From positions 93,000,001-93,064,000 of the forward strand of contig OZ260661.1 of assembly GCA_965285935.1 (NCBI GenBank): a DNA stretch of 64,000 nucleotides, read 5' to 3'. Below the pieces are notes generated by a model. The model worked only from the letters and a program-made list of their open reading frames with translations, did no database searches and was not told the origin of the DNA. The position numbers were made by a program, and so were the translations under genes. Shown here piece after piece: positions 1-54,400 of the stretch. Origin of the DNA: Ophelia neglecta. Its lineage: Eukaryota. The first letter of the stretch is position 1. The number at the start of each line of letters is the position of its first letter.

Positions 1-264
1 GACCTGTTGGTCCGCGTTCTCCACGCTGTCCGTTGTTACCGGGCCTTCCTGCTTCACCAGGACCGCCCTGGCTTCCTTGCTCTCCTCGTTGTCCACTGGG
101 TCCAGCAGGGCCAATTGGTCCGGGTGGTCCGACAGGTCCAGATTCGCCTCTCTCGCCTGCTGGGCCGGCAGGGCCCAGGGGTCCAGCCGCTCCTGCGGGA
201 CCGGTGGGGCCAGATGGACCAGCGCTTCCACGCGCTCCGGGAGTGCCAGGTTGTCCTCGTGGAC
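1..264 (-). CDS. Gene A collagen exon (truncated by window edge)
   Basis: tag acceptor then [12 protein letters not shown]... Confidence 0.9.
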
Positions 265-3200
265 CTATGCGAAGAGTTTTGAAAAAATATCTTCATCGAG
301 AATTTAGTATGATTTGTTTTTTAGCCAGGCTAATCATGTAAAAATAATATTTAAATATGCTATTATATTTACCACATAATAACTGCTTTCATGATGTGTA
401 TATCTATAAGGTCCTGGATTAATACTCAACATATGAACTCCTAAATCTATTGCACCTTATTATTAAGTTCAGTGAAAAAGCCTACCACTAGGTCCTGATG
501 GCCCTGGCCCTCCTCTCTCGCCTGGCTCGCCTCGGGGACCTGCAGGTCCGGCGCTGCCCAAGGAGCCAGTGGATCCAGGTGGTCCTACCGGACCCCTTTC
601 TCCTCTCTCCCCTATAACAATTGCAATGATTTTAATGTAAGTATTATCCCGTTATCGGTATGTAGACATTAATGGTAAATAATTCAGGTTACAAGCAATC
701 GATCTATGGTTATGGAATATTTATAAGTCAAGACCAATAGAATGATATATAAAGGCATATTTAACTATTAGAAAGTGAAGCTTCATACCTGGCGTTCCTG
801 ATTGTCCTCGTTCTCCAGCCGGGCCTAATGGTCCGGTTGGTCCTTGGGGTCCTTGTTCTCCAGCCGTTCCTCGAGGTCCTAATGGTCCGGCTGGGCCTAC
901 TGGGCCTCGCCTGCCTGGTTCTCCATTTGTACCTGGTGGTCCAGACGGTCCGGCAGGACCAGTAGGGCCCCTTTCTCCTCTCTGTCCAGGCTGTCCGCTG
1001 GGCCCAACTCCGCCAGCTGAACCAGGCTCCCCGCGCTCTCCCTGTGGACCTGCAGGTCCAACAGGGCCAGACGGGCCTAGCTGTCCAGACTCGCCGGCTG
1101 GTCCTCGCTCTCCTCTCTCTCCTGGAGTGCCTGGTTGTCCGCGCTCACCTCGGGGTCCAGGCTCTCCTACTTCTCCTGTGGTGCCTGCAGGGCCAGCTGG
1201 TCCGGCTTCTCCTCTCGGGCCTGGCGAACCTGCCTCTCCCGGAGATCCAGGCTGGCCGCTTGCCCCCTGTTCTCCTCTTTCACCAGCTGGTCCGGCGGGA
1301 CCGGCTGGGCCTAAAGGACCAGAAGAGCCCGGAGGTCCGCTTGGACCCCGTTCGCCTCTGCTTCCAGCAGGTCCCGATGGTCCCCTGGCTCCGGGTTCAC
1401 CTGGCTGTCCGGGCTGACCACGCTCGCCCGCAGCTCCTGCGGGTCCGGCAGGTCCTCTCGGTCCTGTACGTAATAATCAAATTACTTTTTATTGCATGTT
1501 AGGCAAATGCGTAGGCAAATAAGAACGATCACATCGAAGACATAAGCATTTTCATGTATAAGTTGAATGTAAAGAACAAGCTTAGTTCCATAGGAATTAA
1601 TAAGCTGGGAAATTTATTTTCAGTAATTCTTGTTTTTCTTTGGTTTCCCATACCTACCTTGTCTGCCAGGTGATCCTGGTAAACCTGATTCACCAAGAGA
1701 GCCCGGTGGTCCGGTTTCTCCACGGGAACCTTGTGCTCCGGCTGGTCCAATTGGTCCCTGTGTTCCAGGGGATCCATCAGAGCCTGCTGTGCCTGGGGTT
1801 CCCCTTTGACCCTGCTCTCCAGGGCGGCCCACAGCCCCTGTGGGACCACGACCGCCGCCAGCTCCTGGTGGGCCCGAGGGTCCTGATGGTCCCGCGGGAC
1901 CGGAAGGTCCTTGTAAACCTCTTTCGCCTGGTGTACCAACTTCTCCGGCAGGGCCAGCAGGTCCACGTTCACCCGCAGGTCCTTGTGGACCCAATGGGCC
2001 GCCAGGTCCTTCAAACAACAAAACAAGGTAAGATTAATTCATTATTTAATGGCCATCCGGAAATGTAGGTTTAAAAAAACATTAATAGGATTGGTACTGC
2101 TTTTTAGCTGATATTTTATTTATGAAAGCACTTAAGAATTTTGAGTTGTATGGCTTTGTAAACCTGGGTATTATGCCCCTAGTATACACAGGCTTTCAGT
2201 GTATGAGTGAGTGAGCCAGTACCTGGACTGCCTGGAGTTCCTCGCTCGCCCTGCTCTCCTCGCTGTCCTCGCTCTCCGGCGGCTCCAGCTGGTCCGAGCG
2301 GCCCTGTTGGTCCGGTGGGTCCGGATGGGCCCCTCTCACCTCGGGGTCCAGCGGGACCGGCAGGTCCTACTCCGCCAGCCTCACCCGCGTTTCCAGGGAT
2401 TCCGCGCTCTCCTGAAGGCCCGGCAGGTCCGGGTGGCCCGGTTTGTCCTAGAGAGTAGACAAGTACATTGAAGATGCCATGCATTATGACTTCAGTAACA
2501 CGTATACAAGTCCACTGTTAAAAATACGGCTAATTTAATTCATTTTATACAATAATAAAATTGCATTTGTTTTTCTTCCGATCTTTAGGTAGGCTAATCT
2601 ATCTGTCAAACCCATTTTTAATAAATTGTTTTGGACACATACAAATTCTTTCTGTCCGTGTAGAACAGAGCTTATTTAAGGTGAGTTAATTAAAGATCCT
2701 TAGATTAAAGATTTTGCCGAACCCGGTGGTTACAACGATTCATAATATATGTCTGCGTCTGTTCTATAAAAAATTTATTTCTTTTATTTCTTTAAATAAC
2801 TTGCACTTCTAATCGGTTGAAATCTGAACTTCTTACTGGGTTTAACTTGTGTTTTACTAGTATAAAATGAATTACCCCCCGGTTAAATTAGCAAAGATTT
2901 GCTTCGCTGCCGTTGTCAGTTTATTTATTCAATCTATATTATTTATTAAATTGAGACTTTATTTGATGATATTAAGCAATAGTTCGCGTGAATTAATTGA
3001 AGATTCAACAGGCGTTATCATGGCGGATCATAATCATAATGAGAGAAACATGTATAGTGTGTATGTCTTCCCTGTAATTAATAGGAAAGCATCTAAATAA
3101 TTATATAATTAATCAATCTAATTACCAGAGGATCCATCACGGCCGTCTTCACCAGGCTCGCCGGCTGGTCCAGCCGGTCCGGCTGGCCCTCGTGGTCCGC

Positions 3201-6200
3201 TCTCTCCTTGTGGTCCTGTAGGTCCCTGTGGGCCGGAGGGCCCGTCAGCGCCGGCTGGTCCTCTAGGTCCCGTGGGACCCGGTAATCCGGCCGGGCCGGC
3301 TGGTCCGGCCTCGCCTGCGGGACCGCGTGGTCCTGTAACGGTAGGACCGTCCCTGCCAGGTTGGCCAGTTGGTCCACGGCTTCCTCTCTCTCCAGGCTCA
3401 CCGCGTTCTCCTGCTGGGCCGGCAGGTCCTCTCTCACCAGGCTGTCCGGTAGGTCCCGATGGGCCATCTTCACCTAGACAAAAAAAACAATTGAAAAGAC
3501 ATTTAGAGCCGCGAGCAAGGGTATGTGCGTTCCATGGGCACACTGACGAAAGCTTTCATAATCAAAAACACCAAAGAAACGTGGTTAATATCATTACACA
3601 TTTCAAATGTAAACGCATAATAGGTATAATATTTACCTCTTGATCCCTGGGTACCCCTCTCTCCTTGAGCACCACGCTCGCCAGCGGCTCCCGCAGGCCC
3701 GGATGGACCTGGCTCGCCTCGGCTACCAGCCGGTCCGGCGGGTCCAGTTGGCCCTCTTTCACCAGCAAGTCCTGGAGAACCGCCTTCACCGGTTTCTCCG
3801 GATGGACCTGCAGGTCCTGAGGGTCCAGCAGGTCCGACAGGTCCAAGTGGTCCACGTGCGCCACCAAGACCAGGTCTTCCTGACTCTCCCGCTTCGCCAG
3901 ATGGTCCAGAGGGCCCAGTGGGCCCTGGAGGTCCGATTGGTCCAGGTTCACCGCCTTGTCCTGTTGGTCCTCGGGGACCGGACTCTCCTGCAGATCCGTC
4001 GGGTCCTCTTTCCCCGGGTGGCCCAGTCTGTCCACCAGAGCCTGGCGATCCGCGCTCTCCGGCAGGCCCAGCAGGCCCTGGCCGTCCGTCAGGTCCAGTT
4101 GGCCCTGAGGGTCCTGCGCTTCCTCGGGCTCCTTGCTCCCCAGCAGGTCCGCGTGGGCCTTGCTCGCCGGTTGGTCCTGGACCTCCACGTTCGCCTGAGG
4201 GTCCCGCAGGACCGCGTGATCCAGTAGCCCCTGTAGTAAGTGACAAATATTAGTAAAACAATCTTAAAATCAATGTTTAGTTTCTAACAGTTTCCCAAAG
4301 CCAATACATCCATATAAAATATACTACTATGAAAATCAAACACTTTTAGAAACTGAAATGCAGATTCAGAGATGTTAAATATCTTTAAACTTTACCTGGT
4401 AAACCTACAGGTCCCCGTGCGCCTCCGCGTCCGGGTTCTCCTCTCGGCCCAGCAGGTCCTGCAGGTCCCGCCGGTCCGGTTGGTCCAGACTCACCAGGAG
4501 GTCCCTGAATGCCTCGCTCACCGCCGCCAGTAGCACCAGCAGGACCTGGGAAAAAGATAAAGGATTACAGGTCATTGTGGCATTCTTCACCCCTGACTGT
4601 GATGCCACAAAGCCGCCATGCATATAACTTAATTGAATTGCGTCCAACATAATCAAGCCTTTATAAAAAGAGTCTTTCATATTAATTGATTGAAAATTTT
4701 GTTATAGCAAACCAAGGCTGCGATGACTCCTTCCTTGGTGTGGAAAACATACAAGAAGGGGCTAGGCCAAGGGCCAGTACTTGCAAGACCCGCAATTATT
4801 ATCAACCCGATGGCATGTCACATCTTTAAGGTGTACTCAGTTCAAGAGTAGCAGACGGCAATTCAGCGCCCTCTGGTGTTCAAACTTATCTCAAAAAGAA
4901 ATTAACAGTTTATATGTGTACCTGGTGGTCCGACGGGTCCTGGCTCTCCACTCTCTCCAGGTTCTCCAGCTTGGCCTCGAGATCCACGAGATCCAGCCGG
5001 ACCTGGTGGGCCTACTGGCCCAGATTCCCCAGACTCGCCCGCTGGACCAGCTGGACCCGCAGGCCCAGTTTGTCCTCGAGTACCTTGGCCGCCTGGCTCA
5101 CCGCCAACTCCAGGTTCTCCGGCCGGTCCGGCCGGTCCTTGATGGTTAAAAGGGAGGATAATATTAAGTAATGAGTTATGAACATAAAATATATTTACAT
5201 AGCGATGAAAGTTAATACATGCATATTTTCAGGCAATCAGACACCACTCACCTGTTGGTCCCCTTGGTCCAGCCTGACCGGGAGGTCCTTGGCCTCCTCT
5301 CTCGCCAGATAACCCAGCAGGCCCAGCTGGTCCCAGAGGTCCTGGTGGTCCCACGGGCCCAGTGCCCCCAGGAATACCAGACGGTCCAGGCTGTCCAGTT
5401 GAACCAGTTGACCCATCCTGACCTGAGGGTCCAGTGGGACCGCGCTCTCCCGTAGGTCCAGCGGGTCCTCTTTCTCCTCGTTGCCCTCTTGGCCCAGTTA
5501 AACCAGATGGTCCCACTGGTCCTCGTGATCCTCTTTCACCGCCTGGTCCTGGCTGTCCTCTCGGACCCGTTGGGCCAGGTGGTCCTCGTTCTCCTGCTGA
5601 TCCGATACCACCGGACACACCAGGAGTTCCTCTCGGTCCTGCAGGTCCCAGAGGACCCGGCTGCCCGGGGAACCCGGCTTCACCTCGCTCGCCAGCTATT
5701 CCGGCTGGTCCTCTTTCCCCTCTTGGGCCTGGTGGTCCCACCGGTCCCACAGGTCCGGATTCTCCAGCAGTTCCAGGTGGGCCAGATGGGCCTAAAAGAA
5801 AGTACACGAAACAATATGCAGAAGGTGTCTAACAGGCATAATTCATGCATCGAGCCATAATTTTTTGAAGTACATCTGAATACAAATTAACCTAGTGTTT
5901 ACCTGCCTGTCCAGGGAGTCCATCACTTCCGTCTTGTCCAGGGAAACCAAGAGGTCCAGGGGGTCCTTGAGGTCCCCGTGAACCTTCCGGCCCAGCGGGA
6001 CCAGGGCCTCCTCGTTCACCGGGTGAACCTGGTATTACAGATTAACACAGCTTGACACATGCAGGGTTTCATTAGTCTAGGATTCGTACGAAAAGACAGC
6101 TAGGTCTATAGCGGTATATTTTATATTTGAAAGGCGTATAGGCTTATTTTTCATCTTTAATCAAGCCTATTTAAGAACAATCTCATGTTTTCGGAAAAAA

Positions 6201-9200
6201 AATTAACAACATTGCTGGGTATTATTAGATAATACGTCTCAAACATAGGGTTATTGATTGAACTGTAGACGTGGTATTACCAACTGAGCCGCCAGGTCCT
6301 CTCTCTCCCTGCGCGCCAGCTGGTCCGGCCGGTCCGAGTGGGCCTGGACGTCCCGTTGCACCAGTTCCACCCACCTGCCCGCGCTCTCCACTCTCTCCTC
6401 TAATACCGGCGGGTCCTCGTGGGCCTTGTTCTCCCTGCTCCCCGGGACCGCCGGCTTCTCCCGCAATGCCTCGTGGGCCTGTGGGTCCGGCTGGTCCTCG
6501 TGGACCTTGTTATGAAAAAATATACACTTATTTAACAAATAATGGACACAGCTACGTGTTGAGTTTAACTGCAATCATTTTAAGCGGACAGAGAGTTACC
6601 GGGATAATATATTTTGGACAGCTTCTTGCATAGCTTTACATTAGAATTTTAAAACACCTGTTGGTCCGACGGGTCCTCTTGTTCCGGGCTCTCCAGCAGG
6701 ACCTGCGGGTCCGGCTGGTCCGAGAGGTCCTGTCGGGCCTCCAATGCCAGGACCACCTGAGGGTCCCCGCTCGCCCCGCTCCCCAGACGCTCCGGGAGGT
6801 CCCAATGGCCCAGTGGGCCCTGATGGGCCAATGCCTCCAGCGTCACCGGCTGGACCACTGGGTCCAGTGGCTCCCGGAGGTCCAATCTGTCCGATTGGTC
6901 CTGACTCTCCTACTTCTCCACTGGGTCCTGGTTGTCCTCGGGGTCCCGGGCGGCCAGATGGGCCCGGTCCGCCAGGAGAGCCTCGCGGACCTGACTCTCC
7001 ACTCGCTCCCGCAGGTCCAGTTGGCCCTAGTTAACGATAAACACTACGTAGAGACACTTGCGCTCCTCACAATACCTTTACTATGTATACAGGTCTTTTT
7101 TTTTCAGTAATAGCCTATCTAAAGTCTAATGTACATCAATCATCTCGAGTTTTCTCGAGTCTCACTTTTCTATACATCTTTATTGACATGATAAAGCGTC
7201 AAATTATTAAATCCAAGCCCTTAAAAGCTCAAGACCTAACCTGTTGGACCAGCTGGTCCCGCCTCCGAGCCCCTGGGTCCTTGTGGTCCTCGTTCTCCTG
7301 GTGGTCCTACAGGCCCTAGGGGTCCAGCCTCTCCGGCTTCTCCAGAGGGTCCGGGTGGTCCAGCAGGTCCTCTTGGACCTTGGAAGCCCGGGCCTCCGAC
7401 TGGACCCGGTAGACCCGTCTCACCAGACTCCCCGGCTGGTCCTGCAGGTCCAGTTGGCCCGAGTGGGCCACTAGGACCGGAAACACCTGCCTCTCCGGAT
7501 GGCCCGGAGGGGCCGGCTGGCCCGCTTGGTCCTGCTAATCCTTGTTCTCCTGGAGGTCCCCCTTCTCCCGCTGGTCCACTGGGACCGGCTGGTCCTGTTG
7601 GACCAGGCAGTCCTCGTATCCCTGGTCCTCCACCTTCACCTGGCTGACCTGCGGGTCCAGCAGGGCCACGCAGTCCAGATTCACCTGGCGCGAAAACAAT
7701 TTAGAAGTTAATTCCGAGTGCGTGATGAGGTGTAAACTTCCTCTGCTTCAATGAAACGTAGAATGTATCATACATACTATTTGAGCTTAAAGATAGATTA
7801 CCGAGCTACTGCTATCCTTGTTGAAAAAACAAGTCGTATTTTGAAATAAGGCTAATTTACTTTGTGTGTACCCTACCTGGAGGTCCCGATGGTCCCGAGA
7901 TGCCAGGAGGTCCTGGTTCGCCTCGTTCTCCGGTGGGGCCGGCTGGCCCAGCTGGTCCGGGTTCAGAGCCTGGTGGACCGATCTCTCCACGTGGTCCAAG
8001 CTCTCCTCGCGGTCCAGGGGGACCAGTTGGTCCTGCTGGTCCCTCCGGTCCTGACGGTCCCGGAGGGCCGGATTGGCCGTCAAATCCTGGGCGACCTGCT
8101 TCACCTGGTGGTTCAACAAATATGTACATCAATAATAGCCAATTAGGTTATTATACTTGCACTTGCTGGCACATTATTAACACAAAAATCCTTTCAGAAA
8201 TACACCATTCAATTTTCCGTAGACATTTGTTGAGAAATTATGTGAGCGTACCTGGCCCTCCTGGGAATCCTGCTGGTCCTCTCTGTCCTCTGGGTCCTAA
8301 TGGTCCCAACGGCCCAGGTGGTCCCACTGGTCCTCTCTCACCGCGCTCTCCGGACTCTCCAGCAGGTCCTATTGGACCGGTGGGTCCCAGGCCACCGGGT
8401 CCGCCCGCAGGACCTGCGGGGCCTGAAGCCCCTGTTGCTCCGTTACTTCCATCGGCTCCCGGCGGGCCTGGTGGCCCATCAATTCCACGGGTTCCCTGTT
8501 CACCTCTTGGCCCGGATGGTCCTGAAGGTCCAACAGGTCCCCTCTCACCACCGAAGCCTGGTCCTCCAACAGGTCCCGCTGGTCCTCTCGGCCCCGGAGG
8601 TCCGACATTGCCAATGCCTCCAGGTGGCCCAGATTGTCCTGGTGATCCGGATGGCCCACTTTGTCCGATGGGTCCAGGTCCGCCTGGCCCTCCTCGTATA
8701 CCCTGGGGTCCTGCCGGTCCCCTTGGTCCTACTGGTCCAACAGGACCGTCGGCACCTGGCGATCCAGGTCCCCCTGTCTCACCAACAAATCCAGGTTGAC
8801 CCGTTTGTCCCCTCTCTCCAGGAAAGCCGGCGGGTCCTGCATGGTGATCAGTCAAAAGCGAACAGCATTAGGCTATAATTTATTATGCTAGATTAAGATT
8901 CCTGGTGGGAAATTACTATAAAGCGTGCTCAATAATACTTTGGGAATAAAATATTTTGTGTTAACTAATAACTCTGGAGAGTTGCAAGGGAAAGTCACAT
9001 ATAGATGGTTTGGAAATGAAAGCCTTTTTCGTTTCTCGAAACGAGCACCAGAGATATTGAATTAAGAAGGAAAACTTCAGGTCTTGAAAGAATTATATTC
9101 ACTGTAATGTAAATTGGCTGTTTGCCACTAATGCGTACCTGGTGGTCCGACTGGACCGATTGGTCCACGCGGTCCTGCTGGGCTGCTTCCTGGCGGGCCT

Positions 9201-12200
9201 GACACGCCGGGCTCGCCGGGTGGTCCTGAAGGGCCGGCAGGTCCTCTGGGTCCAGGTTCACCCGCAGGGCCGCTTCTACCCACCTCACCTGCAAAAAAGC
9301 AATTTATTTTGAACACATGTAGATCAAGAGAGCGTAGCACTAGCTGTTGTGGTCCTATCTAAATCTTACCGCAATACGAAATCGCCAACTGCGCAGATCA
9401 TAGAAGTAGTTTTGTATTTCTTACCGCTTGATCCGGGTGATCCAGCTGGACCGGAGGGGCCGGTCGGTCCACTTGGCCCAGACGGTCCTCTTTCCCCTGA
9501 AGGCCCAGCTGGTCCAGCAGGTCCAGGTCTGCCTGAGGGTCCTGTTGGTCCCCTTTGCCCAGTTGGTCCTGATTGAGTTCCATCGGGTCCCCGTGGGCCA
9601 GTGGGCCCTGGCGGGCCGATGGGTCCAGGAAATCCCGGGCCGCCGCTGATGCCAGGCGGGCCTCGGAAACCGGGCTCACCTGAAGGTCCGGCTTGACCAG
9701 AAAACCCTGGTCCGCCTGGTCCTCCTGCGGGTCCGGCCGGTCCGCGTTGTCCTCGGTTACCTTAAAAAGAATCAAATATAACAATAGTTCCATTACAAAT
9801 GGTTGAGCAACTCAGTCCCAATGTTTCTGTTCCCAACTTCCGGTTATTTATTCTAGACATGTTAGGCCTAGGCCCTAATAGATTTCTTCAAAGTAGGAGT
9901 AGTCATATTCCACATATGTGACACTATATTATATTATATTTTTTACCTGATGGTCCAGTTCGTCCAGGTGGTCCAATTGGTCCTCCAGGTCCTGCAGGTC
10001 CTAGCTGTCCACTTGATCCTGGAGGCCCTACGGGGCCTCTTCCTCCGGCCGGTCCAACGGGTCCAGCTGGTCCAGCAGGTCCGGATGGTCCTGCTAGGCC
10101 TACTTCACCTGGCGAGCCAGGTCCACCCGGAGGCCCAGGAAATCCGGGTCGGCCGGGTGGGCCACGTGGGCCGGGTTGACCTGGTTGGGAGCCGCGTGGC
10201 CCTGTACCGCCTTTGTCTCCAGCGGGTCCTCGTGGCCCCGCTGGTCCAACACTACCTGGGGGACCACTGGGTCCTTGAGGTCCGGGTCGTCCAGCTGGGC
10301 CGAGAGGTCCTCGTCCGCCGGGAGGTCCTGTAGCACCTGAAGAGCCTGGTGGCCCTCGAACGCCATCAGTGCCCGGTGTCCCGGCCGATCCGGCAGGACC
10401 AGTTCCTCCTGTTGCGCCTCGGGGACCACCTGGTCCAGGCGGTCCTATAAGAAAACCCATGGTATCAAGCGCTTGACATGCAATTCAGATTTAATAACCA
10501 TACAAATTTAACCTTTAATTTACGGTTCTACAAGGAGGTTGCTATTTATCTCCTTTTAAAGAAGAACAACTGACAGCCAATCAAATGTATTTTTAAAAAG
10601 ATTTGTCTTTCTTTTAAATATAGATATACATTTCTATCATTAATAGGCCTTATATGAATCTAATTGTGAATAAAGAAGTAAAATCAAGAAGGTCAATGAC
10701 AAGGTCTTACGTTATATAAAATCAAGCATATTCCGCTTCATGTATGGTGTAATTAAGACTAATTAAATTATCGTTTTCTAATTTGATATGAACCGCATTT
10801 GGGTATATTTTATTCATGCTGTGCATGTGTAATGATTAGGTGCATGAGGGTAAGGGACATTCATTTGCAACAGCGATTTGTTTCAATTTTTAAAGATAAA
10901 TGGGATATCGAATGACGTCCTGCAAAACAGCAATTATATACTATACTAGCATCTATAGTTGAAGATATTAATAATACAAAGGTTGTCTTTCACAGAAAAA
11001 TCTTACAAAACACAATTTTAGCCCCTTCGAGCGAAGTTTCCTGTTATAACTTATCTTTCCGGAAATATTTTAGAACACTTTATCTGTGAAAGACAGCCAG
11101 TGGTAAGGAGAAAGGGCACCCAGTTTGAAGAGACAAATCATTTTCATACTGTGCTCAAATATGTTTCATCGTGCAGGGATAATTTGTGAACTAAAATCAG
11201 ATGGTCACTGACAATGGTGTCAGAGTTACTAATTTTTCAGTGCGGTGAGTAGTACAGAGATAGCTCATTCTGGCGCAGACGATACATGCAAGAGATAAGT
11301 AGCAGTGACCATATGGTTTTATTTCATTTTTAAAGCCTGCAGTAAATATGGATTTATGCGTTTAACTTTCAAACATATAGATCAAAATCATGTCATTTAT
11401 CATCTTTGGGTGCGCTTCATCCTTGATGTGACTTATATTACAGTGATTTGTGCATATTGATGTTGTTTGATTGCCAATATAGCCGCGCAATATAAAGAAC
11501 ACAGCGCAACGCAAGAAAATGTATAGAGGGTTGGGGCGTTGCGGTAAACTTCGTCCTATACCTGGAATGGGTACGGGGCCTGGGGCTACAATGTATCCAG
11601 GACAGATGGTCCTCATCAGTCTTTCGACCAGGATCTCTCTCTCCCGAGCGGAGCCATAGCCCTCAGATACGTAGTAGGCACGACTGGTGGTTGAGGCGAT
11701 CACCTGGAGGGCCCCCAAATTGATTCCCGATCCAAAGCCTACAGAGGTGATGACGATGTTGTTATCCACTCTAGCTCTATTCAGCTGAGTTACAAACTCT
11801 CTCTCCGGCTCTCGGCCCATGATGACGATGGCGAAATCGGGGATTCTTGGTCGATCTCCCCGGCCTCCACTGAATATGCTATCGGTCATCACCCGGAGTC
11901 CCTCGTCCAGGAAGTGATCGGATCGACTCATCCTGCTAAGGGTATTGATTCTTTGTCGCACCTCCAGATTGGTGTAGTAGCGATCAAGGTAGAATGACAC
12001 CTCCCCTACGCTACTATAGCGGACGGTTGAAAAATGAACATTAGGCTCGCCGATAGTGAACTGTTGGGAGAGGAGACTTGCAAGATCTCTCATTGAGTCC
12101 CACAGCAGGTTGGAGAGGTCCTCTCCGGCGTCCAGCACTATCGCCACATCGCTGAGGTTCCGACATCCTGTGCGGATATGAAAAGCAATTATTGTTTGAA

Positions 12201-14882
12201 AAGAAAAAGCGCCAGCAAGCGTGCCGCATCTAGCGAACCGCTAGCCATCACCTACGCATGCGCAACAGAATAACGAGAAGCGATGCATGTTGAACGCTAC
12301 ACGACAAACACAATGTAAATAAACCTCTAGAGTACACATGTGCCATACAGGAGTTAAACCAAAAGTAGCAATCACGCTTTTTTAAATAGTAAATATCTCA
12401 ATAGGCGTATTCACATTGCGTGTGTCGTGCAATGAAACGCAGCATAAAGCGCACGCGCAGAAGCCATACTTGTACAGGAACCCAGGTGATGGAGTACCCG
12501 AACAGGCTACATTTTATCTTTGGAGCTTCCTCTTCTTTGTTTTCTGGCGAATAGATATCTGCCTACATTGAAAGGAGGAAGCGCACATCACATAGAGTGA
12601 TGAAGGTCAAGTTCTAGCAGAACGCGTTGTAGACAGAGGAGAGGCGGAGTGATATCTGTACGCCCTAAAGATCTCGCAGGATCATATGCTTTTGACAGAT
12701 CAAATGAGATAAAGGCATGCAACGATCCGATGAAGCTGAAATTTAAGAAATATTTGATGGTTGTCAATGGACACGCGCACACACTAAATGCTCGAGTAAA
12801 ATTACCTGTTCCGAGTACACGTTGGTCGGATCCTGAAAAATGCGAATATTCCTCGTCATTAATTAAGGAAGCCATTGATATACATGTGTGGACAGAATTT
12901 GGGAAAATAATTCACTTGATTCATGGAGATCACGAAAACTTGTTTGTTCGCGAATAATCTGAAGAACAAGGAGACATTTTATTTAGGCCCTATTGATAAT
13001 TAACGAAATCGGGAATTTCATGAATTTCGACCAATGACGTATCAAGTGTTCGACGGCGACTTTATCTTCATGGGTCTACATGTATTAAACTTTACTGTCG
13101 CACACGATTTATGTGTTTTAAATCATTCTATTAAACAATACATGTACTACAATAATGACTAATGACCTATACCTAATCTAAAGGCCACGCCACAAGCATT
13201 TGAAGAAGGCTCTGTATGTACCAGGAAGTTGGTACCAGGAATGGGGTATCCATCTATTACATGCCACTGGCAGATATAGGCAGTGAGATAAGAGTGAGGA
13301 GGGTTATCACAGAAAATGGCGATGTATCTATATATTGAGGTGGAAGATGGGATTGAGCGTATTGAATACGAGATGAAGGGCCTAATGACTGGATATGGAG
13401 AGAGCTGGATGGGGTTGGGGAGACCCTCGGCCTGGCGGTTAAAGTGAGACGGGCAGCCCCTGGATATCCCCTTGTTCCGATGCTTAGCTTGTGAATATTA
13501 GATGTGGAATGGATGGGTTTGTCATAGTGAGAAGATATAATCGAAACATCGCCTTCCAAATGTGTTGATTTGAAGATCATATTGAATATTAGGGGACTAT
13601 AGACCGGGGTCTTTTCGAAATTCATGAACAACAAATAGGCTTACTAAATGATTGCTATACATTTATTAAACCCATGTGCTTCTTTTTGTAATGGAATTCA
13701 CGAAATTCACGGAAACATCGACATGATTATATCATTTGTGTTGGGAATTCATTTTTCTTTTTGTCATCATTTCACTTGTGTAATTGTTTCCTTTTATAAG
13801 TTTGAAATGGTTGATTTTTTAATCTCTAATTCACGAATTAACAGTGTTCATTATCTCCCAAATCCTGTCCATCTCTGTGGATTGTACAAGGCCAATTATT
13901 CTCAGAGTTCTAGGCCTCTGACGTCATCTCTCTGACGTCATCTCCAACTCGCGATAAGGAACTCCTAAATCTCAACTCTCTAATTACGCAGTAAATATTA
14001 TGAAATTAAATTTTCTAATGGCAAAATATGAAAATAAACTGTGAGAAAATGTTAGAAATTAAGATAAAATTCAAAGTAGTCGAAATGAAATTTAGTGTAC
14101 ATTTGACATGTCTATAGTTGCACATATTATGTATAATCGTTTTAATTCAATAATCGTCGGATCCAATATAAGTCGAAGAAAAAGAAGACATAATAATTTG
14201 CCTTCAATGCAATAAGTATGAAGTATCAAAAGCAGACGATATTTTTGCAACTAATAAGACGAAATGACAGGCATCATAAACTAATTCATTTCTCTACTTG
14301 TGCAGGACTATTTGTTTAAAGATTAAACAAGATATGTAAGTCTGTTGAATCAAAAAGTGGGAAAAAAAAACTACTCGAAGAGTAAACTGATCTTGGGTTG
14401 TATTTCTGCTTATTATTTCATTCATCAATAAGATTAAGATTGGAAATTGCTTCTATGCAAAATGGGACGCATTCTTATTTCGAAAATATTCGAGTGATGT
14501 GACTGGTTTGCAGTGGTAACTCAGGTTATTATCTGAGATGTTATGTGTAAATAATTAAACAGGGAATTAGAACTTGGTCCAGAAAAACTCATTCATTTTA
14601 CAAACAATCCAATGATCAGTAAACTCTAGAAACAGATATGTAAAGAAAACGGAAATAAATATAATTAAAAAAAAACGTAACAGTTAACAGTTGGTTTAAC
14701 ATGAAATTAACTATAAGTAAATCGAAGTACTATTAGAACTAAGAAAGAACGTGACACTAAACTAAAGGTTGGTGCGTGGTCTAGATTATCTTACCTTGTG
14801 CATCTATGACTGTCACGAAATTGAACATGAAGATGAACGCCAGAGCACAAGCTCTGGCGTCCGCTAATCTTGGCGGTCGCAT
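1..14882 (-). CDS. Gene A: secreted giant collagen alpha chain with N-terminal vWA domain (multi-exon, 3' end outside window)
   Basis: Spliced GT-AG model: 14882-14795 (signal peptide), 12167-11562 (vWA), then Gly-X-Y exons 10444-9947, 9760-9425, 9288-9139, 8836-8252, 8104-7877, 7684-7241, 7026-6658, 6505-6281, 6028-5903, 5791-5252, 5137-4922, 4545-4396, 4230-3637, 3473-3126, 2447-2223, 2008-1658, 1463-789, 611-486, 264-<1. All junctions are phase 1 and keep the frame; ~2150 collagenous residues lie in the window. Confidence 0.93.
486..611 (-). CDS. Gene A collagen exon, 126 nt (14 triplets)
   Basis: Gly-X-Y, AG/GT flanks, phase 1-1. Confidence 0.9.
789..1463 (-). CDS. Gene A collagen exon, 675 nt (75 triplets)
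   Basis: Gly-X-Y, AG/GT flanks. Confidence 0.92.
1658..2008 (-). CDS. Gene A collagen exon, 351 nt (39 triplets)
   Basis: Gly-X-Y part of ORF 1620..2021, AG/GT flanks. Confidence 0.9.
2223..2447 (-). CDS. Gene A collagen exon, 225 nt (25 triplets)
   Basis: Gly-X-Y part of ORF 2179..2484. Confidence 0.9.
3126..3473 (-). CDS. Gene A collagen exon, 348 nt, with GPTVTG interruption
   Basis: Gly-X-Y part of ORF 3118..3543. Confidence 0.9.
3637..4230 (-). CDS. Gene A collagen exon, 594 nt (66 triplets)
   Basis: Gly-X-Y part of ORF 3503..4246. Confidence 0.92.
4396..4545 (-). CDS. Gene A collagen exon, 150 nt, with G-G-GER break
   Basis: [14 protein letters not shown]...GLP, AG/GT flanks. Confidence 0.88.
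4922..5137 (-). CDS. Gene A collagen exon, 216 nt (24 triplets)
   Basis: Gly-X-Y, AG/GT flanks. Confidence 0.88.
5252..5791 (-). CDS. Gene A collagen exon, 540 nt (60 triplets)
   Basis: Gly-X-Y part of ORF 5229..5807. Confidence 0.92.
5903..6028 (-). CDS. Gene A collagen exon, 126 nt (14 triplets)
   Basis: Gly-X-Y, AG/GT flanks. Confidence 0.88.
6281..6505 (-). CDS. Gene A collagen exon, 225 nt (25 triplets)
   Basis: Gly-X-Y, AG/GT flanks. Confidence 0.9.
6658..7026 (-). CDS. Gene A collagen exon, 369 nt (41 triplets)
   Basis: Gly-X-Y, AG/GT flanks. Confidence 0.9.
7241..7684 (-). CDS. Gene A collagen exon, 444 nt, with GSEAG interruption
   Basis: Gly-X-Y, AG/GT flanks. Confidence 0.9.
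7877..8104 (-). CDS. Gene A collagen exon, 228 nt, with GSEPG interruption
   Basis: Gly-X-Y part of ORF 7857..8132. Confidence 0.88.
8252..8836 (-). CDS. Gene A collagen exon, 585 nt (65 triplets)
   Basis: Gly-X-Y part of ORF 8238..8855. Confidence 0.92.
9139..9288 (-). CDS. Gene A collagen exon, 150 nt, with GSSPAG interruption
   Basis: Gly-X-Y part of ORF 9128..9340. Confidence 0.9.
9425..9760 (-). CDS. Gene A collagen exon, 336 nt, with GTQSG interruption
   Basis: Gly-X-Y, AG/GT flanks. Confidence 0.9.
9947..10444 (-). CDS. Gene A first collagen exon, 498 nt, with GSQPG interruption
   Basis: Gly-X-Y part of ORF 9924..10460. Confidence 0.92.
10981..11098. mobile_element. Small MITE-like element with ~20-bp terminal inverted repeats
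   Basis: GGTTGTCTTTCACAGAAAAA ... TTTATCTGTGAAAGACAGCC (18/20 inverted match) in a gene A intron. Confidence 0.5.
11562..12167 (-). CDS. Gene A vWA domain exon (606 nt, phase 1-1), degenerate MIDAS
   Basis: [17 protein letters not shown]...[10 protein letters not shown]...[17 protein letters not shown]...ITSVGFG...LQVIAS...ICPG; typical vWA pattern with flanking Cys. Confidence 0.92.
12806..12832 (-). CDS. Candidate 27-nt phase 1-1 microexon of gene A (GSDQRVLGT)
   Basis: tttttcag acceptor and CAG|gtaatt donor; in frame between the signal and vWA exons; no transcript evidence. Confidence 0.35.
14795..14882 (-). CDS. Gene A start and signal peptide (exon spans 14930-14795)
   Basis: [29 protein letters not shown]|G; G|gtaag donor; polypyrimidine-cag acceptor at 14931. 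Confidence 0.85.
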
Positions 14883-15158
14883 TGTGCGGGTCACTTATTT
14901 TGCGGATCTATAACGTTTTCTTCACAAAATCTGACAAAAAGAAGAAAATATTTTGTGTTGTATAGTTAAGCAAAAATGTTTTTTGAAATCTGAGATATTC
15001 TGTTAACATAAGAGGATATTAAATCTTAGTTAGATGCCAAGTTTATTTTCTGCGACCTAGTATGGTTTGACTCTCTGGCGCAATGCGATAAATGGTAGTA
15101 GTAAACGAAAGAACAACTACAAAGAACAGCAGAAAGTAGTGTATGGTATAATTACCTT

Positions 15159-15194
15159 CTAAACATTCAGTCCCGCGTGACTATCTCGATACAT
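15159..15194 (-). promoter_or_regulatory. uORF MYRDSHAGLNV* in gene A 5'UTR
   Basis: ATG...TAG followed by AAG|GT; positional counterpart in gene B. Confidence 0.6.
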
Positions 15195-15230: not shown

Positions 15231-15331
15231 AGCCCTATAGGCCTGGTCGGGCCTTGTCTGGACAACTGGCTCCCGCCGTTCACGAGGCTCAGCTAAATCA
15301 GACAAGGCCTTCCGACGACTCGCCTTGGCTA
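15231..15331 (-). promoter_or_regulatory. Conserved 5'UTR RNA stem-loop element, copy A
   Basis: 11-bp stem GGCCUUGUCUG/CAGACAAGGCC (15309-15299 with 15260-15250); shared with gene B copy. Confidence 0.8.
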
Positions 15332-21935: not shown

Positions 21936-21974
21936 CCCCCAACCCCCCACCCCCCACCCCCCACCCCCACCCCC
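21936..21974 (-). repeat. C-run tract (G-quadruplex-capable on minus strand)
   Basis: CCCCCAACCCCCCACCCCCCACCCCCCACCCCCACCCCC. Confidence 0.6.
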
Positions 21975-31864: not shown

Positions 31865-32046
31865 TAATGCCAAAAAGATGATAATTTCTGGTGATTGTAA
31901 TTGTTGTCTGAATGAATGTGAGGGGGGAATTAAACCACCAGCTAGAAAGCAAAGGTTCAATCACCTGAGAAACACAACGACTCCTAATCATAACCTAGAA
32001 TAAGCTGGATAAGCATGTTTAGACCCTATAAGTATAAACTCCACTA

Positions 32047-50967: not shown

Positions 50968-51060
50968 GGCCAAGGTAGTCCATTGGAAGGCCTTGTCTGT
51001 CGTTAGCTACACCTGACAACTCGGGTGTTGGTTGTCCAGACAAGGCCCGTTTATAAGGCC
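50968..51060 (+). promoter_or_regulatory. Conserved 5'UTR RNA stem-loop element, copy B
   Basis: GGCCUUGUCUG (50989-50999) pairs with CAGACAAGGCC (51037-51047); upper stem ACACCUGA-caac-UCGGGUGU. Confidence 0.8.
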
Positions 51061-51156: not shown

Positions 51157-51338
51157 AAGGTAAGAACTACTGCCAGTGTAGTAGTATGAACAACTTTCTA
51201 CACCGAACTACTATTTAAGTTAGTAGCGTGATGTGTCGAGTTCCGCCACAATCAAAGTAGACTCGTGTAAAATGTTTTTTTATAATTTGAGGAATACCAT
51301 ATTTAAAATATTTCCTTTTTTCATTGTTAGAGTTGAAG

Positions 51339-51450
51339 ATGGAACCCCCGGGGTCTTCTTATAGAAGGCCATTCGGGTCACGTGAGACCTCACGTACCTT
51401 TGTTGCTCTACTGTTTTTCCTGAATGTGATAATTACAAGCGGTCAGAGAT
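51339..51450 (+). CDS. Gene B start and signal peptide (exon spans 51331-51450)
   Basis: [37 protein letters not shown]; T|gtaagt donor. Confidence 0.85.
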
Positions 51451-54400
51451 GTAAGTAGTTCTAAAGGATACTAGCCCAACCACCAATTAAAGGTAGAACT
51501 ATCCTCATCGTAAGCAGAAAATACATCTTCATTAAGCCTATAAAAATAGCATTAATATACTTGATGCTGCAGACTGAAAAAATGACATGATTGTGATTAA
51601 CTTTTCGTGATGATACTATAAGCACTATCTGTTGTTATTTCTTGCAGTTGATTGTACGGTACCCGCTGATGTGGCATTCGTTATAGACGCCAGTACAAGT
51701 ATTCCGAGTAACCAATGGACAACAGTATTACAATTCATTGTCAGTGTTACAGCCCGCCTGCAGGTGGGCGAGAACCAGATTCGAGTGGGCGCCACGCGTT
51801 ACGCCTCGGCGGCGAGCGCCCAGTTCACTCTGAACCGCTACTACGACCAATCGTCGTTGTCCTCAGCCATTCGGCGTATCAGCCGAATTGAAGGCTCGAC
51901 GAACACTGCGGCCGGTATTCGAATCACCCGGACTGACATCTTCAGGTAAACAATGCCAACACTTTGTACGGGTGACTTCGACCTCCCCCTCCCCCAATCA
52001 AATCGTCCACAGGCAGGGTTTTGTGTTGGAAAATAAGAAACAACAAAATTGAATTGAGTTGCCGAAAATCTTCATTTTCTTTGCTTCCTTCAGAATATGA
52101 ATAAAAACAACAGTTGAAGGCAAAAGAAGTGTTGATAAGCCTAAACACTATAGTATAATTCGTCTGAAGTCCTGTTAGCTGATTCGCTGATCTATCACTT
52201 TGCAAATGATTAACATATTACGTGGGAATCTAACGGTCAAACAACCGCACCCTAATGAAATCGGCGACCCCTTGACCAGCTTTGTCTTTCGTTTTTCAGT
52301 TTCGGTCGGGGTGATCGGGCTGACGTGCCTGACCGAATGATCATCATTACCGATGGTCGTTCAGATGACCGCACTCAAGCCATTTACCAAGCCAACCTGG
52401 CCAAGTCTTCCGGCATCAAAATCTTGACAGTGGGCATTGGGCCTGACTCGGATTTTGAAGAACTTCAACTGCTCGCCGATTCCCCGGCTGAGGCGCAGGT
52501 GCTGACGGTGGGACGCACAGAACAACTGGTGGGATTAATCTCCCCATTGGTGACTTATATCTGTCCATCTCCACCACGCATCGGTAAGTTCCCTAAGTAG
52601 TGTAATGCCTAAAACCAATTACTCATTTGCCTTTATCCATTTCAGACACAGGGCAAATATTGGATCCATTTCGACATGGAACATTCTAGTGTCGACGCCG
52701 TGGAGTGCGCGTCTTCAGCAGCGCAACTATATGCTTTATCGCGCGCTTTGATGATATTTTTGCCTGCCATGAGCGGACGCAAAGCAAAACACAACATTGG
52801 GGATATCAAACGAAAAAGAGGGCAAAAGAATGGTACATAAAGCAGCCCACATAGGAATTGCTAGTGATAAAAATAGGAAATGAGCAGGCTAGTTGCGCGC
52901 CGACGCCGAACAGTATATGGACACCTGTGAGCCGTTCGAGTGTTAACGCCGCACGGTAAAGAAGACTTTGGTGCGCGGTTTAGGCCTGCAATGAAATAAT
53001 AAACCAGAACTACTTGAACAAAACGTCATTCTGTCATTAACGTCGCTTTCGTTAACTTAGTTTACTATCTTCATTTCATTTAATAATTTTTTTAATTCCA
53101 ACTTTGCGCAAACAATGACAGATCGGCGTTCGGTTCAGTGGTATAAGGTCTAAATTCCATTGCATTTATGTGCTTCTTCATCAATATGGTTATGGTTGAA
53201 AGTGGGATTCTATGTGGTATATATACTAAAGTATCTGTTTGTCGCATTAAAACACGAGTCAATGTTATTGACCCATCAAACGCTTACTCGCAGTTCATGT
53301 TCACCAGCGGGGGTGATTGTGCCTAGACACCCTTAGTAATTTTAAGTTTTTGCCCAAATTAAAAATGGCACAGTGTTGTGTTTCCCCTGTCCTGTGCACG
53401 GTATTTCACCGGTTTGGCGCTGCTTTTCCTTCCTCGGGTCAATTCTATCTTTAAAAGGTTACATGCTTAGTGGGTTGCCATGTATTTGTTGGTCAATTCC
53501 ACAAAATATAGCGCAATGTCTGCTTATTCTTAAAATGGCGCACGCTGGTTTTATAATAGAGAGCGCTAGCTGTAATAATCACATAATGATTACGGGTCGC
53601 TTTGCGGGGTTTCGTTTCAGGAGAAGATACTGGATCGTACGCATGCGCTTACTAACATTTGCATAATAAATTCTATAAATAACTTATGTATTTTGCTTTG
53701 GATTGGTATCGTTGATCTTAATGGTGGTATATGTCCTGTTGTTTTGTTGTTATTATGTTTGTCGGTGCATTTTGCGAGCGCTTGCTGCTTTGGTTGGTTT
53801 TAACTATGTTTGCCCTTTGTTTTGCCCAACAGAATGCTTAAACAGCCTGGATCTTGCACTTGTCGTTGACGGCTCAACTAGCATTAGCCCTGAAATAGAG
53901 TGGACGCGAATCCAGACCTTTTTAGGGAATCTGGTCTCGGCTTTGCCGGTCAGCTCCTCTCGCACTCGGGTCGGTGTTATTCAATACAGTAACAACGCTA
54001 GAATTGAATGGCTTCTGAATGCCAACAATTACGAGCGACCCCGAATTGTCCAGCGTATCCGCACATTGCGTCAGATGCAGGGCAGCACCAACACATCTGG
54101 GGCCCTGTGGATGCTTCGGGAGAGGTTTTTCCAGACAAACTTAGGTGATCGTCGCGATGTGCCGAATGTTGCTATCATCGTTACTGATGGGCAGTCAAAC
54201 AGCCTCGAAGACACCGAAAGGGAGGCGCTGTGGGTCAAAAACACATTCCCCTCCATCATCACCATTGTCGTCGGAGTGACCAACGCTGTCAATGCTAGGG
54301 AGCTTGCCATCATCGCCTCGGACGACGGCAGAGGAAACCCTATGGTCGTGAGAGTACAGGACTTCGCCTCCCTAACCCTATCTCTCGAGGGGTTGCTTGG

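What the first reader, a model, noticed from the sequence alone, without database searches (positions are those of the whole stretch)
15231..15331. Structured RNA element in the 5'UTR of collagen gene A, shared with paralog B 35 kb away
Seen: gene A sense reads AGCCAAGGCGAGUC-GUCG-GAA-GGCCUUGUCUG-AUU-UAGCUG-AGCCUCGUGAACGGCGGGAGC-CAGUUG-UC-CAGACAAGGCC-CGAC-CAGGCC-UAUA-GGGCU. Gene B (50968-51060) shares the identical blocks GGAAGGCCUUGUCUG (15 nt), UUAGCU and GUUGUCCAGACAAGGCCCG (19 nt), plus GCCAAGG..AGUC upstream and UAUA.GGC downstream, while flanking UTR and introns show little similarity. The fold is an 11-bp perfect stem above a conserved GAA bulge, then a small internal loop, a 6-bp stem and a variable apical hairpin (core 60 nt in A, 59 nt in B). 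Known: vertebrate COL1A1/COL1A2/COL3A1 mRNAs carry a 5' stem-loop bound by LARP6 that coordinates chain translation; this element is larger and lies away from the start codon. Inference: an undescribed cis-regulatory RNA coupling translation or ER localisation of the two chains. Alternatives are paralogous exonic pre-miRNAs or DNA-level Smad (CAGAC) sites.
Basis: partly seen in the sequence, partly recalled or inferred. Interest (0 to 1): 0.92.

Follow-up and report, generated by a model that had tools for sequence, protein, structure and literature searches.

The report
Conserved hairpin in giant-collagen mRNA leaders
Two head-to-head genes for giant (about 2.5 micrometre) collagen chains of a lophotrochozoan invertebrate carry the same 60-base RNA hairpin in their 5' leaders, and so do two collagen transcripts from other organisms. 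It looks like an undescribed translation-control signal, analogous to but not related to the vertebrate collagen 5' stem-loop.

Summary
Window 15231-15331 (minus strand, gene A) and 50968-51060 (plus strand, gene B) share exact 15-nt and 19-nt blocks. Each folds into a 59-60-nt hairpin: an 11-bp stem, a small internal loop, a 6-bp stem with G-U pairs, and a variable apical helix.

- **Copy number:** these are the only two copies in the 762-Mb genome, so it is not a repeat. Rfam has no match.
- **Other organisms:** a metagenome scan found the same hairpin 55-61 nt upstream of the start codon on two intronless collagen contigs. The neighbouring VWA domains there are only 23-34% identical to those of the window.
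- **Strand:** the inner and apical helices form only on the sense strand.
- **The genes:** A and B encode about 8,730 and 8,739 Gly-X-Y residues, with N-terminal VWA domains and a C-terminal membrane anchor.

My best reading (confidence 0.6) is a cis-acting 5'UTR RNA bound by a trans-acting factor that controls or coordinates translation of partner chains. It is not a member of the vertebrate LARP6 5' stem-loop family.

Rivals are a processed (miRNA-like) hairpin, a DNA-level Smad-type palindrome, and mRNA-mRNA pairing.

Limits: only four sequences, almost no covariation in the core, and no RNA data for this species. Another agent of this scan reached a similar verdict on copy B of this same window.

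The parts
15231..15331 (-). It is the core hairpin plus an A-specific lower helix and a closing helix shared only by A and B.
   Evidence: MFE -49.6 kcal/mol, z -4.6, 0 of 200 shuffles as stable
15250..15309 (-). Conserved 60-nt core hairpin of gene A. 5' strand of the 11-bp stem 15309-15299; loop AUU 15298-15296; inner stem 15295-15290 paired with 15268-15263; apical helix 15289-15269; loop UC 15262-15261; 3' strand 15260-15250.
   Evidence: model R1 scores 74.2 bits
15156..15357 (-). Inferred non-coding exon 2 of gene A holding the hairpin. It has a pyrimidine-tract/AG acceptor at 15358 and a GT donor at 15155-15154. A short uORF (ATG 15194, stop 15161-15159) ends 3 nt before the donor.
   Evidence: sequence read; splice sites by consensus only, no RNA data
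14795..14930 (-). Inferred exon 3 of gene A: 48 nt of leader, ATG at 14882, signal peptide, ending in phase 1.
50968..51060 (+).
   Evidence: MFE -41.0 kcal/mol, z -4.3
50989..51047 (+). Conserved 59-nt core hairpin of gene B. Stem strands 50989-50999 and 51037-51047; loop UCGU 51000-51003; inner stem 51004-51009 paired with 51029-51034; apical helix 51010-51028; loop UC 51035-51036.
   Evidence: model R1 scores 72.1 bits
50943..51159 (+). Inferred non-coding exon 2 of gene B holding the hairpin. Acceptor AG at 50941-50942, donor GT at 51160. A uORF (51127-51156) ends 3 nt before the donor.
   Evidence: sequence read; consensus only
51331..51450 (+). Inferred exon 3 of gene B: 8 nt of leader, ATG at 51339, signal peptide, ending in phase 1.
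5..12147 (-). Gene A coding exons inside the window: one VWA exon (11362-12147) and Gly-X-Y exons (5-10445). The gene continues beyond the window start.
51632..63996 (+). Gene B coding exons inside the window: VWA1 (51632-51949 and 52325-52600), VWA2 (53703-54455) and Gly-X-Y exons (54701-63996). The gene continues beyond the window end.

Best explanation
The element is a cis-acting structured RNA in the 5' untranslated leader of the mRNAs for giant VWA-collagen chains.

**Conserved unit.** A hairpin of 48-60 nt: an invariant 11-bp G+C-rich stem, a small asymmetric internal loop (3-4 nt on the 5' side, an invariant UC on the 3' side), a 6-bp stem held partly by G-U pairs, and an apical helix of free sequence and length.

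**Position.** It sits more than 100 nt from the 5' end and 55-142 nt before the start codon.

**Mechanism (inferred, not shown).** I think it is the docking site of a sequence-specific RNA-binding protein that sets when, where or how fast these mRNAs are translated. Because the same site sits on both partner chains, A and B, it would couple their output so that chains of matched length (about 8,730 and 8,739 triplet residues) are made together at the ER.

**What is shown.** Sequence conservation, sense-strand-specific folding, uniqueness in the genome, and presence in the leader of homologous transcripts.
For: 1. **Exact shared blocks, far above chance**. Paralogues A and B are old: their VWA domains are 23% identical.
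2. **Two further copies.** They lie on intronless collagen contigs L010 (hairpin 137-184, ATG 246; the contig is 28,252 nt) and L013 (hairpin 55 nt before the ATG; signal peptide, two VWA domains, then Gly-X-Y). L013's VWA region is only 23-34% identical to anything in this genome. The 11-bp stem and most of the inner stem are nevertheless base-for-base identical.
3. **The RNA model separates homologues from chance.** R1 scores the four copies at 70-77 bits on the sense strand and about 27 bits on the antisense strand. Six chance palindromes that matched the same 22-nt pattern score 26-37 bits on both strands.
4. **Sense-strand specificity.** Each core is 5.6-8.0 kcal/mol more stable as sense RNA, and the inner helix needs U-G and G-U pairs.
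5. **Apical helix.** Unrelated apical sequences extend the helix in all four copies. Shuffling only the apical insert gives fractions of 0.09, 0.0045, 0.093 and 0.05 on the sense strand, against 0.30, 0.04, 0.26 and 0.58 on the antisense strand. My Fisher combination, worked by hand from those fractions, is about 0.001 against about 0.13.
6. **Only two copies in 762 Mb,** by exact pattern, BLAST and RNA model.
7. **Matched partner chains.** A and B have near-equal helix lengths and the same architecture, as expected of chains of one molecule.
[quoted passage not shown] A LARP6-type gene (La motif plus SUZ-C motif in one open frame) exists in this genome.
Against: - No RNA data for this species. 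Exon status and the spliced distances to the AUG are inferred.
- Only four sequences, from two or three organisms.
- 15 of 17 core pairs never vary, so covariation statistics are not significant (121 of 500 shuffles reach the observed values).
- Invariant stems with a free loop are the reverse of what most protein-bound elements show. That pattern resembles a miRNA precursor or a DNA palindrome.
- No partner protein is identified, and presence of a LARP6-type gene is only a necessary condition. Invertebrate LARP6 lacks the extended RRM loops, one of which vertebrate LARP6 needs for 5'SL binding (PMC4615758).
- Fibrillar and other collagens from other samples (L034-L036) lack the element, so its range may be narrow.
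Confidence: 0.6

Rival explanations
1. The hairpin is a processed substrate: a 5'UTR-embedded miRNA precursor, or a Drosha/Dicer-type cleavage site that destroys the mRNA as a form of autoregulation.
For: The conservation pattern fits. Two arms of about 21 nt are conserved and the terminal part is free in sequence and length. An internal mismatch in the middle of the duplex is common in miRNA precursors (established knowledge).
Against: - No Rfam miRNA family matches.
- L010 shows no basal pairing below the stem and B none for about 17 nt, whereas Drosha needs about 11 bp there (established knowledge).
- Terminal loops are only 4-5 nt, and the L010 hairpin is 48 nt in all.
- Long assembled transcripts retain the hairpin.
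- The element is kept in cis on each of three or four different chain mRNAs, where one miRNA gene would suffice.
Confidence: 0.12
2. The conserved blocks act as DNA: two inverted CAGACAAGG motifs (Smad-type CAGA boxes) or another palindromic transcription-factor site, lying downstream of the transcription start and driving both collagen genes.
For: Both arms contain GTCTG/CAGAC. The invariance of both arms is what a protein-DNA site would show. TGF-beta/Smad control of collagen genes is well established in vertebrates (established knowledge).
Against: - Spacing between the two arms varies: 26, 35, 37 and 38 bp.
- Conservation runs well beyond a 5-bp Smad core.
- The inner blocks are complementary only through G-U pairs, so only as sense RNA.
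- The apical inserts are self-complementary on the sense strand only.
- The RNA model scores 70-77 bits on the sense strand and about 27 bits on the antisense strand.
Confidence: 0.08
3. The identical self-complementary arms let the mRNAs of different chains pair with one another by strand exchange between hairpins. This would bring partner mRNAs together for co-translational assembly. The need to keep several genes mutually complementary would freeze the stem sequence.
For: It would explain why stems are invariant rather than covarying across old paralogues and across organisms, and why the element sits on partner chains of matched length. RNA-RNA dimerisation through palindromic sequences is known for oskar and bicoid mRNAs and for retroviral genomes (established knowledge).
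Against: An intramolecular hairpin of -30 to -35 kcal/mol is kinetically and entropically favoured over an intermolecular duplex. Known dimerisation sites use exposed loops, and here the loops are not conserved. There is no direct evidence.
Confidence: 0.07
4. The similarity is a relic with no function: recent gene conversion between A and B, or a chance palindrome.
For: Within this genome alone, two copies 35 kb apart could be explained by a short conversion tract.
Against: The same hairpin with the same inner blocks sits in front of collagen reading frames from other organisms whose VWA domains are 23-34% identical. Chance palindromes that matched the same search pattern lack the inner blocks and score half as many bits.
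Confidence: 0.03

Closest known systems
Vertebrate collagen 5' stem-loop (5'SL) of COL1A1, COL1A2 and COL3A1 mRNAs, bound by LARP6
   Same: Both are conserved structured elements in the 5' leader of collagen mRNAs, shared by the different chains of one molecule. Both have the general form of two helices flanking an internal loop, at a similar size (46-48 nt there, 48-60 nt here) (PMC4615758, PMC12288881). The presumed logic is the same: one trans-acting factor sees all partner mRNAs.
   Different: - No sequence similarity was seen or tested.
- The 5'SL encloses the start codon; this hairpin lies 55-142 nt upstream of it.
- In the 5'SL a 9-nt internal loop carries the specificity and the stems are free to vary. 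Here the stems are invariant and the loop is 5-6 nt.
- The 5'SL is reported only in vertebrate type I and III collagens. The genes here are giant VWA-collagens with a membrane anchor and no COLFI domain.
- Binding by a LARP6 homologue is untested.
Histone mRNA 3' stem-loop bound by SLBP
   Same: A short hairpin whose stem sequence itself is highly conserved, shared by all mRNAs of a co-regulated gene set, and read by one dedicated protein (established knowledge).
   Different: It lies at the 3' end, has a 6-bp stem and a 4-nt loop, and acts in processing and coupled translation or decay. It has no relation to collagens, and it did not appear among the Rfam scan results.
Animal miRNA precursors
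   Same: Two conserved arms of about 21 nt with a variable terminal region.
   Different: There is no conserved basal stem, the loops are only 4-5 nt, it lies in the sense strand of a protein-coding leader on several paralogous mRNAs, and no Rfam family matches.

Membership tests
Vertebrate collagen 5'SL (LARP6 site) | The stem-loop encloses the translation start codon | tested here: not met
   The hairpin ends 61 nt (L010) and 55 nt (L013) before the ATG. In A and B it ends 142 and 120 nt before the ATG after the inferred splicing. The start codon is boxed within the 5'SL in PMC4615758.
Vertebrate collagen 5'SL (LARP6 site) | Two stems flank a 9-nt internal loop whose nucleotides carry the specificity, while the stems are sequence-independent | tested here: not met
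   Two stems and an internal loop are present. However, the loop is 5-6 nt (AUU/UC, CUU/UC, UCGU/UC) and the stems are invariant. The criterion comes from PMC12288881 and PMC4615758.
Vertebrate collagen 5'SL (LARP6 site) | Found in fibrillar type I/III collagen mRNAs of vertebrates | tested here: not met
   The host is a lophotrochozoan invertebrate. The genes have VWA domains, about 8,700 Gly-X-Y residues and a C-terminal membrane segment. No COLFI-like frame stood among the ORFs listed after the helix, which I read but did not scan against Pfam.
Vertebrate collagen 5'SL (LARP6 site) | High-affinity binding by LARP6 | not testable with these tools
   Only the presence of a LARP6-type open frame (La plus SUZ-C) at G000:C8, about 21.685 Mb, was shown.
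miRNA precursor | About 11 bp of basal stem below the mature duplex, flanked by single strands | tested here: not met
   The fold of L010 with flanks shows no pairing below the 11-bp stem. B has none for about 17 nt. The lower helices of A and L013 are not homologous.
miRNA precursor | Terminal loop of about 10 nt or more; hairpin of 55-70 nt | tested here: not met
   Terminal loops are 4-5 nt, and the L010 hairpin is 48 nt in all.
miRNA precursor | Discrete reads of about 22 nt from the arms | not testable with these tools
   No RNA run of any kind is listed for this organism.
Any Rfam family (release 15) | Score at or above the family's gathering threshold | tested here: not met
   No match in the whole window at gathering thresholds. 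Permissive scans of both exons gave only chance-level hits, E 0.33-7.3, all far below threshold.
Dispersed repeat / transposon hairpin | Many copies unrelated to collagen genes | tested here: not met
   Exact pattern: 2 places. BLAST with element A: itself only. RNA model: 2 places in 762 Mb.
Smad-binding (CAGA-box) DNA element | CAGAC core acting as double-stranded DNA, independent of strand | tested here: inconclusive
   The cores are present in both arms. Against a DNA reading: sense-only G-U pairing, sense-only apical complementarity and variable arm spacing. Protein binding to the DNA is untestable here.

The most novel reading that the evidence does not exclude
The hairpin is the recognition mark of an undescribed post-transcriptional system that synchronises synthesis of the partner chains of giant cuticle-type collagens. 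It would work either through a dedicated RNA-binding protein or through direct pairing between the identical arms on different chain mRNAs. This would be an independent invention of the principle that vertebrates use with LARP6 and the type I collagen 5' stem-loop.
Probability: 0.4. Interest if true: 0.8.

Novelty: new variant of a known kind. Interest (0 to 1): 0.68.

Why it matters
How the different chains of a heterotrimeric collagen are made in the right ratio and place is understood only for vertebrate type I collagen, through the LARP6-bound 5' stem-loop. The literature describes that element as confined to vertebrate type I and III collagens.

A second, unrelated leader hairpin shared by partner chains of an invertebrate collagen would suggest the problem was solved more than once by the same strategy. 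The case here is extreme: mRNAs of roughly 27-28 kb, chains of about 8,700 triplet residues, and helices of about 2.5 micrometres.

It also gives a concrete handle. A 60-nt RNA can be used for pull-downs, reporters and searches of annelid and other spiralian transcriptomes. It is also a candidate new RNA family for Rfam.

Tried and rejected
**Routes to more orthologues**
- The search for homologous proteins with the L013 N-terminus returned only generic VWA-domain and collagen proteins at 30% identity or less.
- The same search with the L010 N-terminus matched on Gly-X-Y composition alone.
- The search of protein representatives with VWA2 of gene B was swamped by multi-VWA proteins, at most 38% identity. 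No close relative of this species' genes appears to be in those collections.
- The look-up of encoding contigs on the L013 frame: not on record.
- Three other collagen contigs lack the element: a fibrillar VWA/WAP/COLFI transcript L034, L035 and L036.

**Other collections**
- Pattern scans of viral and prokaryotic collections found nothing.

**RNA evidence**
- No RNA run is listed; there are only three runs that hold intron and exon words alike, so they are DNA. I therefore did not spend read laying.

**Phylum**
- The mitochondrial genes are broken by TGA codons into pieces too short for the length window of the protein search.
- An intronless HSP70 placed the genome among lophotrochozoans but could not separate annelid from mollusc.
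- The Atlas search on the L013 VWA region gave only generic VWA clusters.

**Literature**
- Searches for the arm sequences, for annelid cuticle collagen genes and for the JGI sample names gave nothing relevant.

I did not build or search a joined (spliced) sequence, so that step was left out.
- No contig that I take for human was met.

Full report
**1. The observation.** So does 50968-51060 on the plus strand. The 15-nt block GGAAGGCCTTGTCTG and the 19-nt block GTTGTCCAGACAAGGCCCG each occur exactly twice in the window, once per gene. Dinucleotide-preserving shuffles predict 0.14 and 0.01 matches even with mismatches allowed.

As RNA, the full elements fold at -49.6 kcal/mol (A) and -41.0 kcal/mol (B), with z-scores of -4.6 and -4.3. 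The cores of 60 and 59 nt fold at -35.5 and -34.3 kcal/mol, z about -6.

The fold is as described: an 11-bp perfect stem (GGCCUUGUCUG with CAGACAAGGCC), an asymmetric internal loop, a 6-bp stem and an apical helix of variable sequence. An inverted-repeat scan of the whole 5' region of both genes (10400-54800) recovers the element as the only A-B similarity near the leader exons (pairs I19 and I20).

**2. Not a repeat, not a known RNA.** The window is G000:C1:93000001-93064000 of a 762-Mb assembly. Three whole-genome searches find these two places and nothing else:
- an exact pattern for the two stem strands;
- BLAST with element A, which found only itself;
- a covariance model built from four copies (R1; genome search; 74.2 and 72.1 bits).

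The model search scored only the best 150 first-look candidates, so very diverged copies could be missed. Rfam 15 has no match at gathering thresholds over the window. Permissive scans of the two exons gave only chance-level hits.

**3. The genes.**
- Gene A (minus strand) has a signal-peptide exon (ATG at 14882), one VWA exon (11362-12147) and Gly-X-Y exons from 10445 downwards.
- Gene B (plus strand) has a signal-peptide exon (ATG at 51339), two VWA domains (51632-52600 and 53703-54455) and Gly-X-Y exons from 54701 upwards.
- Flanking DNA shows that the triplet repeats add up to about 8,730 residues in A and about 8,739 in B. At 0.286 nm per residue (established knowledge) that is a helix of about 2.5 micrometres.
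- After the helix, each gene has an exon with a hydrophobic membrane-spanning segment followed by basic residues and a tail. No COLFI- or C4-like frame stood among the ORFs listed after the helix; I read these but did not scan them against Pfam.

These are therefore giant VWA-collagen chains with a C-terminal anchor, not classical fibrillar collagens. Their matched length and head-to-head position suggest chains of one molecule. The length and the Gly-Pro-Ser/Ala-rich triplets recall annelid cuticle collagen. That comparison rests on my own knowledge and is a lead, not a test.

An intronless HSP70 of this genome finds bivalves (78-79% identity) and the annelid Owenia (77%) as best named relatives. 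The host is thus a lophotrochozoan, and the phylum is not resolved here. Other agents of this scan judged it probably an annelid.

**4. Where the hairpin sits.**
- In both genes a pyrimidine tract and AG precede the element (A at 15358, B at 50941-50942), and a GT donor follows (A at 15155, B at 51160).
- So it lies in a short internal non-coding exon of 202 nt (A) or 217 nt (B).
- With the next exon joined on paper only, the hairpin ends 142 nt (A) and 120 nt (B) before the start codon.
- These exon boundaries rest on consensus alone. No RNA run exists for this organism, and I built and searched no joined sequence.

**5. Homologues elsewhere: the decisive result.** One scan of public metagenome contigs for the two stem strands, 20-50 nt apart, gave eight loci. 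Six are plain palindromes with nothing else in common. Two are true homologues.
- **L010** is the first 3.9 kb of a 28,252-nt contig. It has the 11-bp stem, the loop CUU, the inner strands UAGCUG and CAGUUG, and the UC. A start codon follows 61 nt later, then a signal peptide and 1,179 uninterrupted Gly-X-Y residues.
- **L013** has the same stem, the loop AUU and the same inner strands. A start codon follows 55 nt later, then a signal peptide, two VWA domains and a collagen helix.
- Both reading frames run for 3.6-4.2 kb without introns, where the window's genes have many. They are most simply assembled transcripts, and 28 kb is the size expected for a chain of about 8,700 triplet residues.
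- The hairpin is therefore part of a mature leader, at least 105-136 nt from the 5' end.

The proteins are distant. L013's VWA region is 23-29% identical to those of A and B. Nothing in this genome exceeds 34%. A and B are themselves only 23% identical in VWA. Against that background, 34 stem nucleotides identical in all four copies indicates strong purifying selection on the RNA or DNA sequence.

Model R1 scores the homologues at 69.9 and 76.8 bits on the sense strand and about 27 bits on the antisense strand. The six chance palindromes score 26-37 bits on both strands.

**6. RNA or DNA, and which strand.**
- The inner helix contains U-G and G-U pairs in all four copies. Copy B changes one U-A to U-G and one G-C to A-U.
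- As antisense RNA or as DNA these positions would be mismatches. Accordingly, each core is 5.6-8.0 kcal/mol more stable in the sense orientation, and the inner helix forms only there.
- The apical inserts (21, 19, 9 and 18 nt) are unrelated in sequence, yet each prolongs the helix.
- Shuffling only the insert reaches the observed stability in 9%, 0.45%, 9.3% and 5% of trials on the sense strand. On the antisense strand the figures are 30%, 4%, 26% and 58%.
- My hand calculation from those fractions, by Fisher's method, gives a combined probability of about 0.001 (sense) and about 0.13 (antisense).

This supports a sense-strand RNA structure.

The weak point is that 15 of 17 core pairs never vary. 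Formal covariation is therefore not significant with four sequences: 121 of 500 shuffles do as well.

**7. Mechanism.** The best-supported reading is a cis-acting leader element recognised by a trans-acting factor. An invariant helix, an invariant UC opposite a short loop and a free apical part suggest that a protein reads the lower helix and internal loop, and that the apical helix only has to exist. On its own, a hairpin of -30 to -35 kcal/mol lying far from the cap should slow scanning ribosomes only moderately (established knowledge from work on leader hairpins). With a bound protein it could block, license or localise translation.

Because the same site sits on both partner chains, it would couple their output. 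This is inference. As a necessary condition only, the genome encodes a LARP6-type protein, with a La motif and a C-terminal SUZ-C motif in one open frame.

Short uORFs lie between the hairpin and the start codon in A, B and L010, but not in L013. They are therefore not an obligatory part of the unit.

**8. Rivals.**
- **Processed hairpin (miRNA-like).** The pattern of conserved arms and a free loop fits. The missing basal stem, the 4-5-nt loops, the 48-nt size in L010, its retention in long transcripts and its maintenance on every chain mRNA all argue against. Small-RNA data are lacking.
- **DNA-level Smad-type palindrome.** CAGAC cores are present. The variable spacing (26-38 bp), the sense-only pairing and the model's strand asymmetry argue against.
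- **Pairing between mRNAs through the identical arms.** This would explain the frozen stems, but it is thermodynamically unfavoured and has no direct support.
- **Gene conversion or chance.** This is contradicted by the homologues from other organisms.

**9. Comparison with what is known.** The vertebrate collagen 5' stem-loop is 46-48 nt. It consists of two stems around a 9-nt internal loop, encloses the start codon, and is bound by LARP6 through the loop while the stems are sequence-independent. It is reported only in vertebrate alpha1(I), alpha2(I) and alpha1(III) mRNAs (PMC4615758, PMC12288881).

The present element works like it in outline: a leader hairpin shared by partner chains, built of two helices and an internal loop. 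It fails the membership features that could be tested, namely position relative to the AUG, loop size, what is conserved, and host gene class. It is therefore an analogue, not a member.

Searches of the literature for the arm sequences and for annelid cuticle collagen genes found no description of it. Another agent of this scan examined copy B of this same window and reached a similar verdict. That is not independent evidence, and I repeated the tests myself.

**10. Verdict.** This is a real, selectively maintained, sense-strand RNA hairpin in the leaders of giant collagen mRNAs. It is undescribed and is probably a translational control or coordination signal. I class it as a new variant of a known kind. 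Confidence that the structure is real and conserved is about 0.85. Confidence in the proposed mode of action is about 0.6. Interest is 0.68.

Noticed in passing
window 1-10445 (-) and 54701-64000 (+), continuing to G000:C1:92971126 and G000:C1:93089734: Genes A and B carry about 8,730 and 8,739 Gly-X-Y residues, a helix of about 2.5 micrometres. The two totals are almost equal, which suggests chains of one giant molecule.
   Followed up: partly
L038:514-942 (-) and L045:5900-6418 (+): After the helix, each giant collagen has an exon with a hydrophobic membrane-spanning segment, a basic stop-transfer motif and a tail. No COLFI- or C4-like frame stood among the listed ORFs, which I did not scan against Pfam. 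These look like type I membrane-anchored giant collagens.
   Followed up: partly
window 20604-20642 (gene A sense = minus) and 50435-50473 (plus): This is the only other A-B similarity upstream. A TATA-like motif is followed by a 17-nt block, AGTTCATTCATAT(T/G)TTA, identical at 16 of its 17 positions in both genes, and GT donors lie about 115 nt downstream. I read it as a candidate shared core promoter and non-coding exon 1, about 5.3 kb upstream of the hairpin exon in A and about 0.5 kb upstream in B.
   Followed up: partly
window 15159-15194 (-), 51127-51156 (+); L010:214-234: Short uORFs lie between the hairpin and the main AUG in A, B and L010. In A and B they end 3 nt before the splice donor. 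L013 has none, and the peptides are not conserved.
   Followed up: partly
window 14795-14882 (-), 51339-51450 (+); L010:246-353: The signal-peptide exons of A and B both end in phase 1. The proteins of A, B and L010 all start M-x-P-P (with G next in B and L010), a small conserved N-terminal motif ahead of the hydrophobic core.
   Followed up: no
G000:C8:21685263-21686579 (-) = L030:349-1662 (-): A single 438-codon open frame with a La motif at its start and a SUZ-C motif near its end, which is the LARP6-type arrangement. It is a candidate, untested, partner for the hairpin.
   Followed up: partly
window 21936-21974, 33300-33360, 36628-36686: Long C-rich and G-rich homopolymer-like tracts lie in the 35-kb gene-free spacer between the two collagen genes. 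They pair with each other as inverted repeats.
   Followed up: no
window 31692-31866, 37678-38748: A cluster of 70-190-nt inverted repeats, 82-90% complementary, sits in the spacer. It is probably the remains of a small transposable element (I1-I5).
   Followed up: no
L010 compared with the window and L013: L010's helix has proline mostly in the Y position (G-x-P) and no VWA domain. A, B and L013 are rich in G-P-x triplets and have VWA domains. The hairpin therefore marks at least three different chain types.
   Followed up: no
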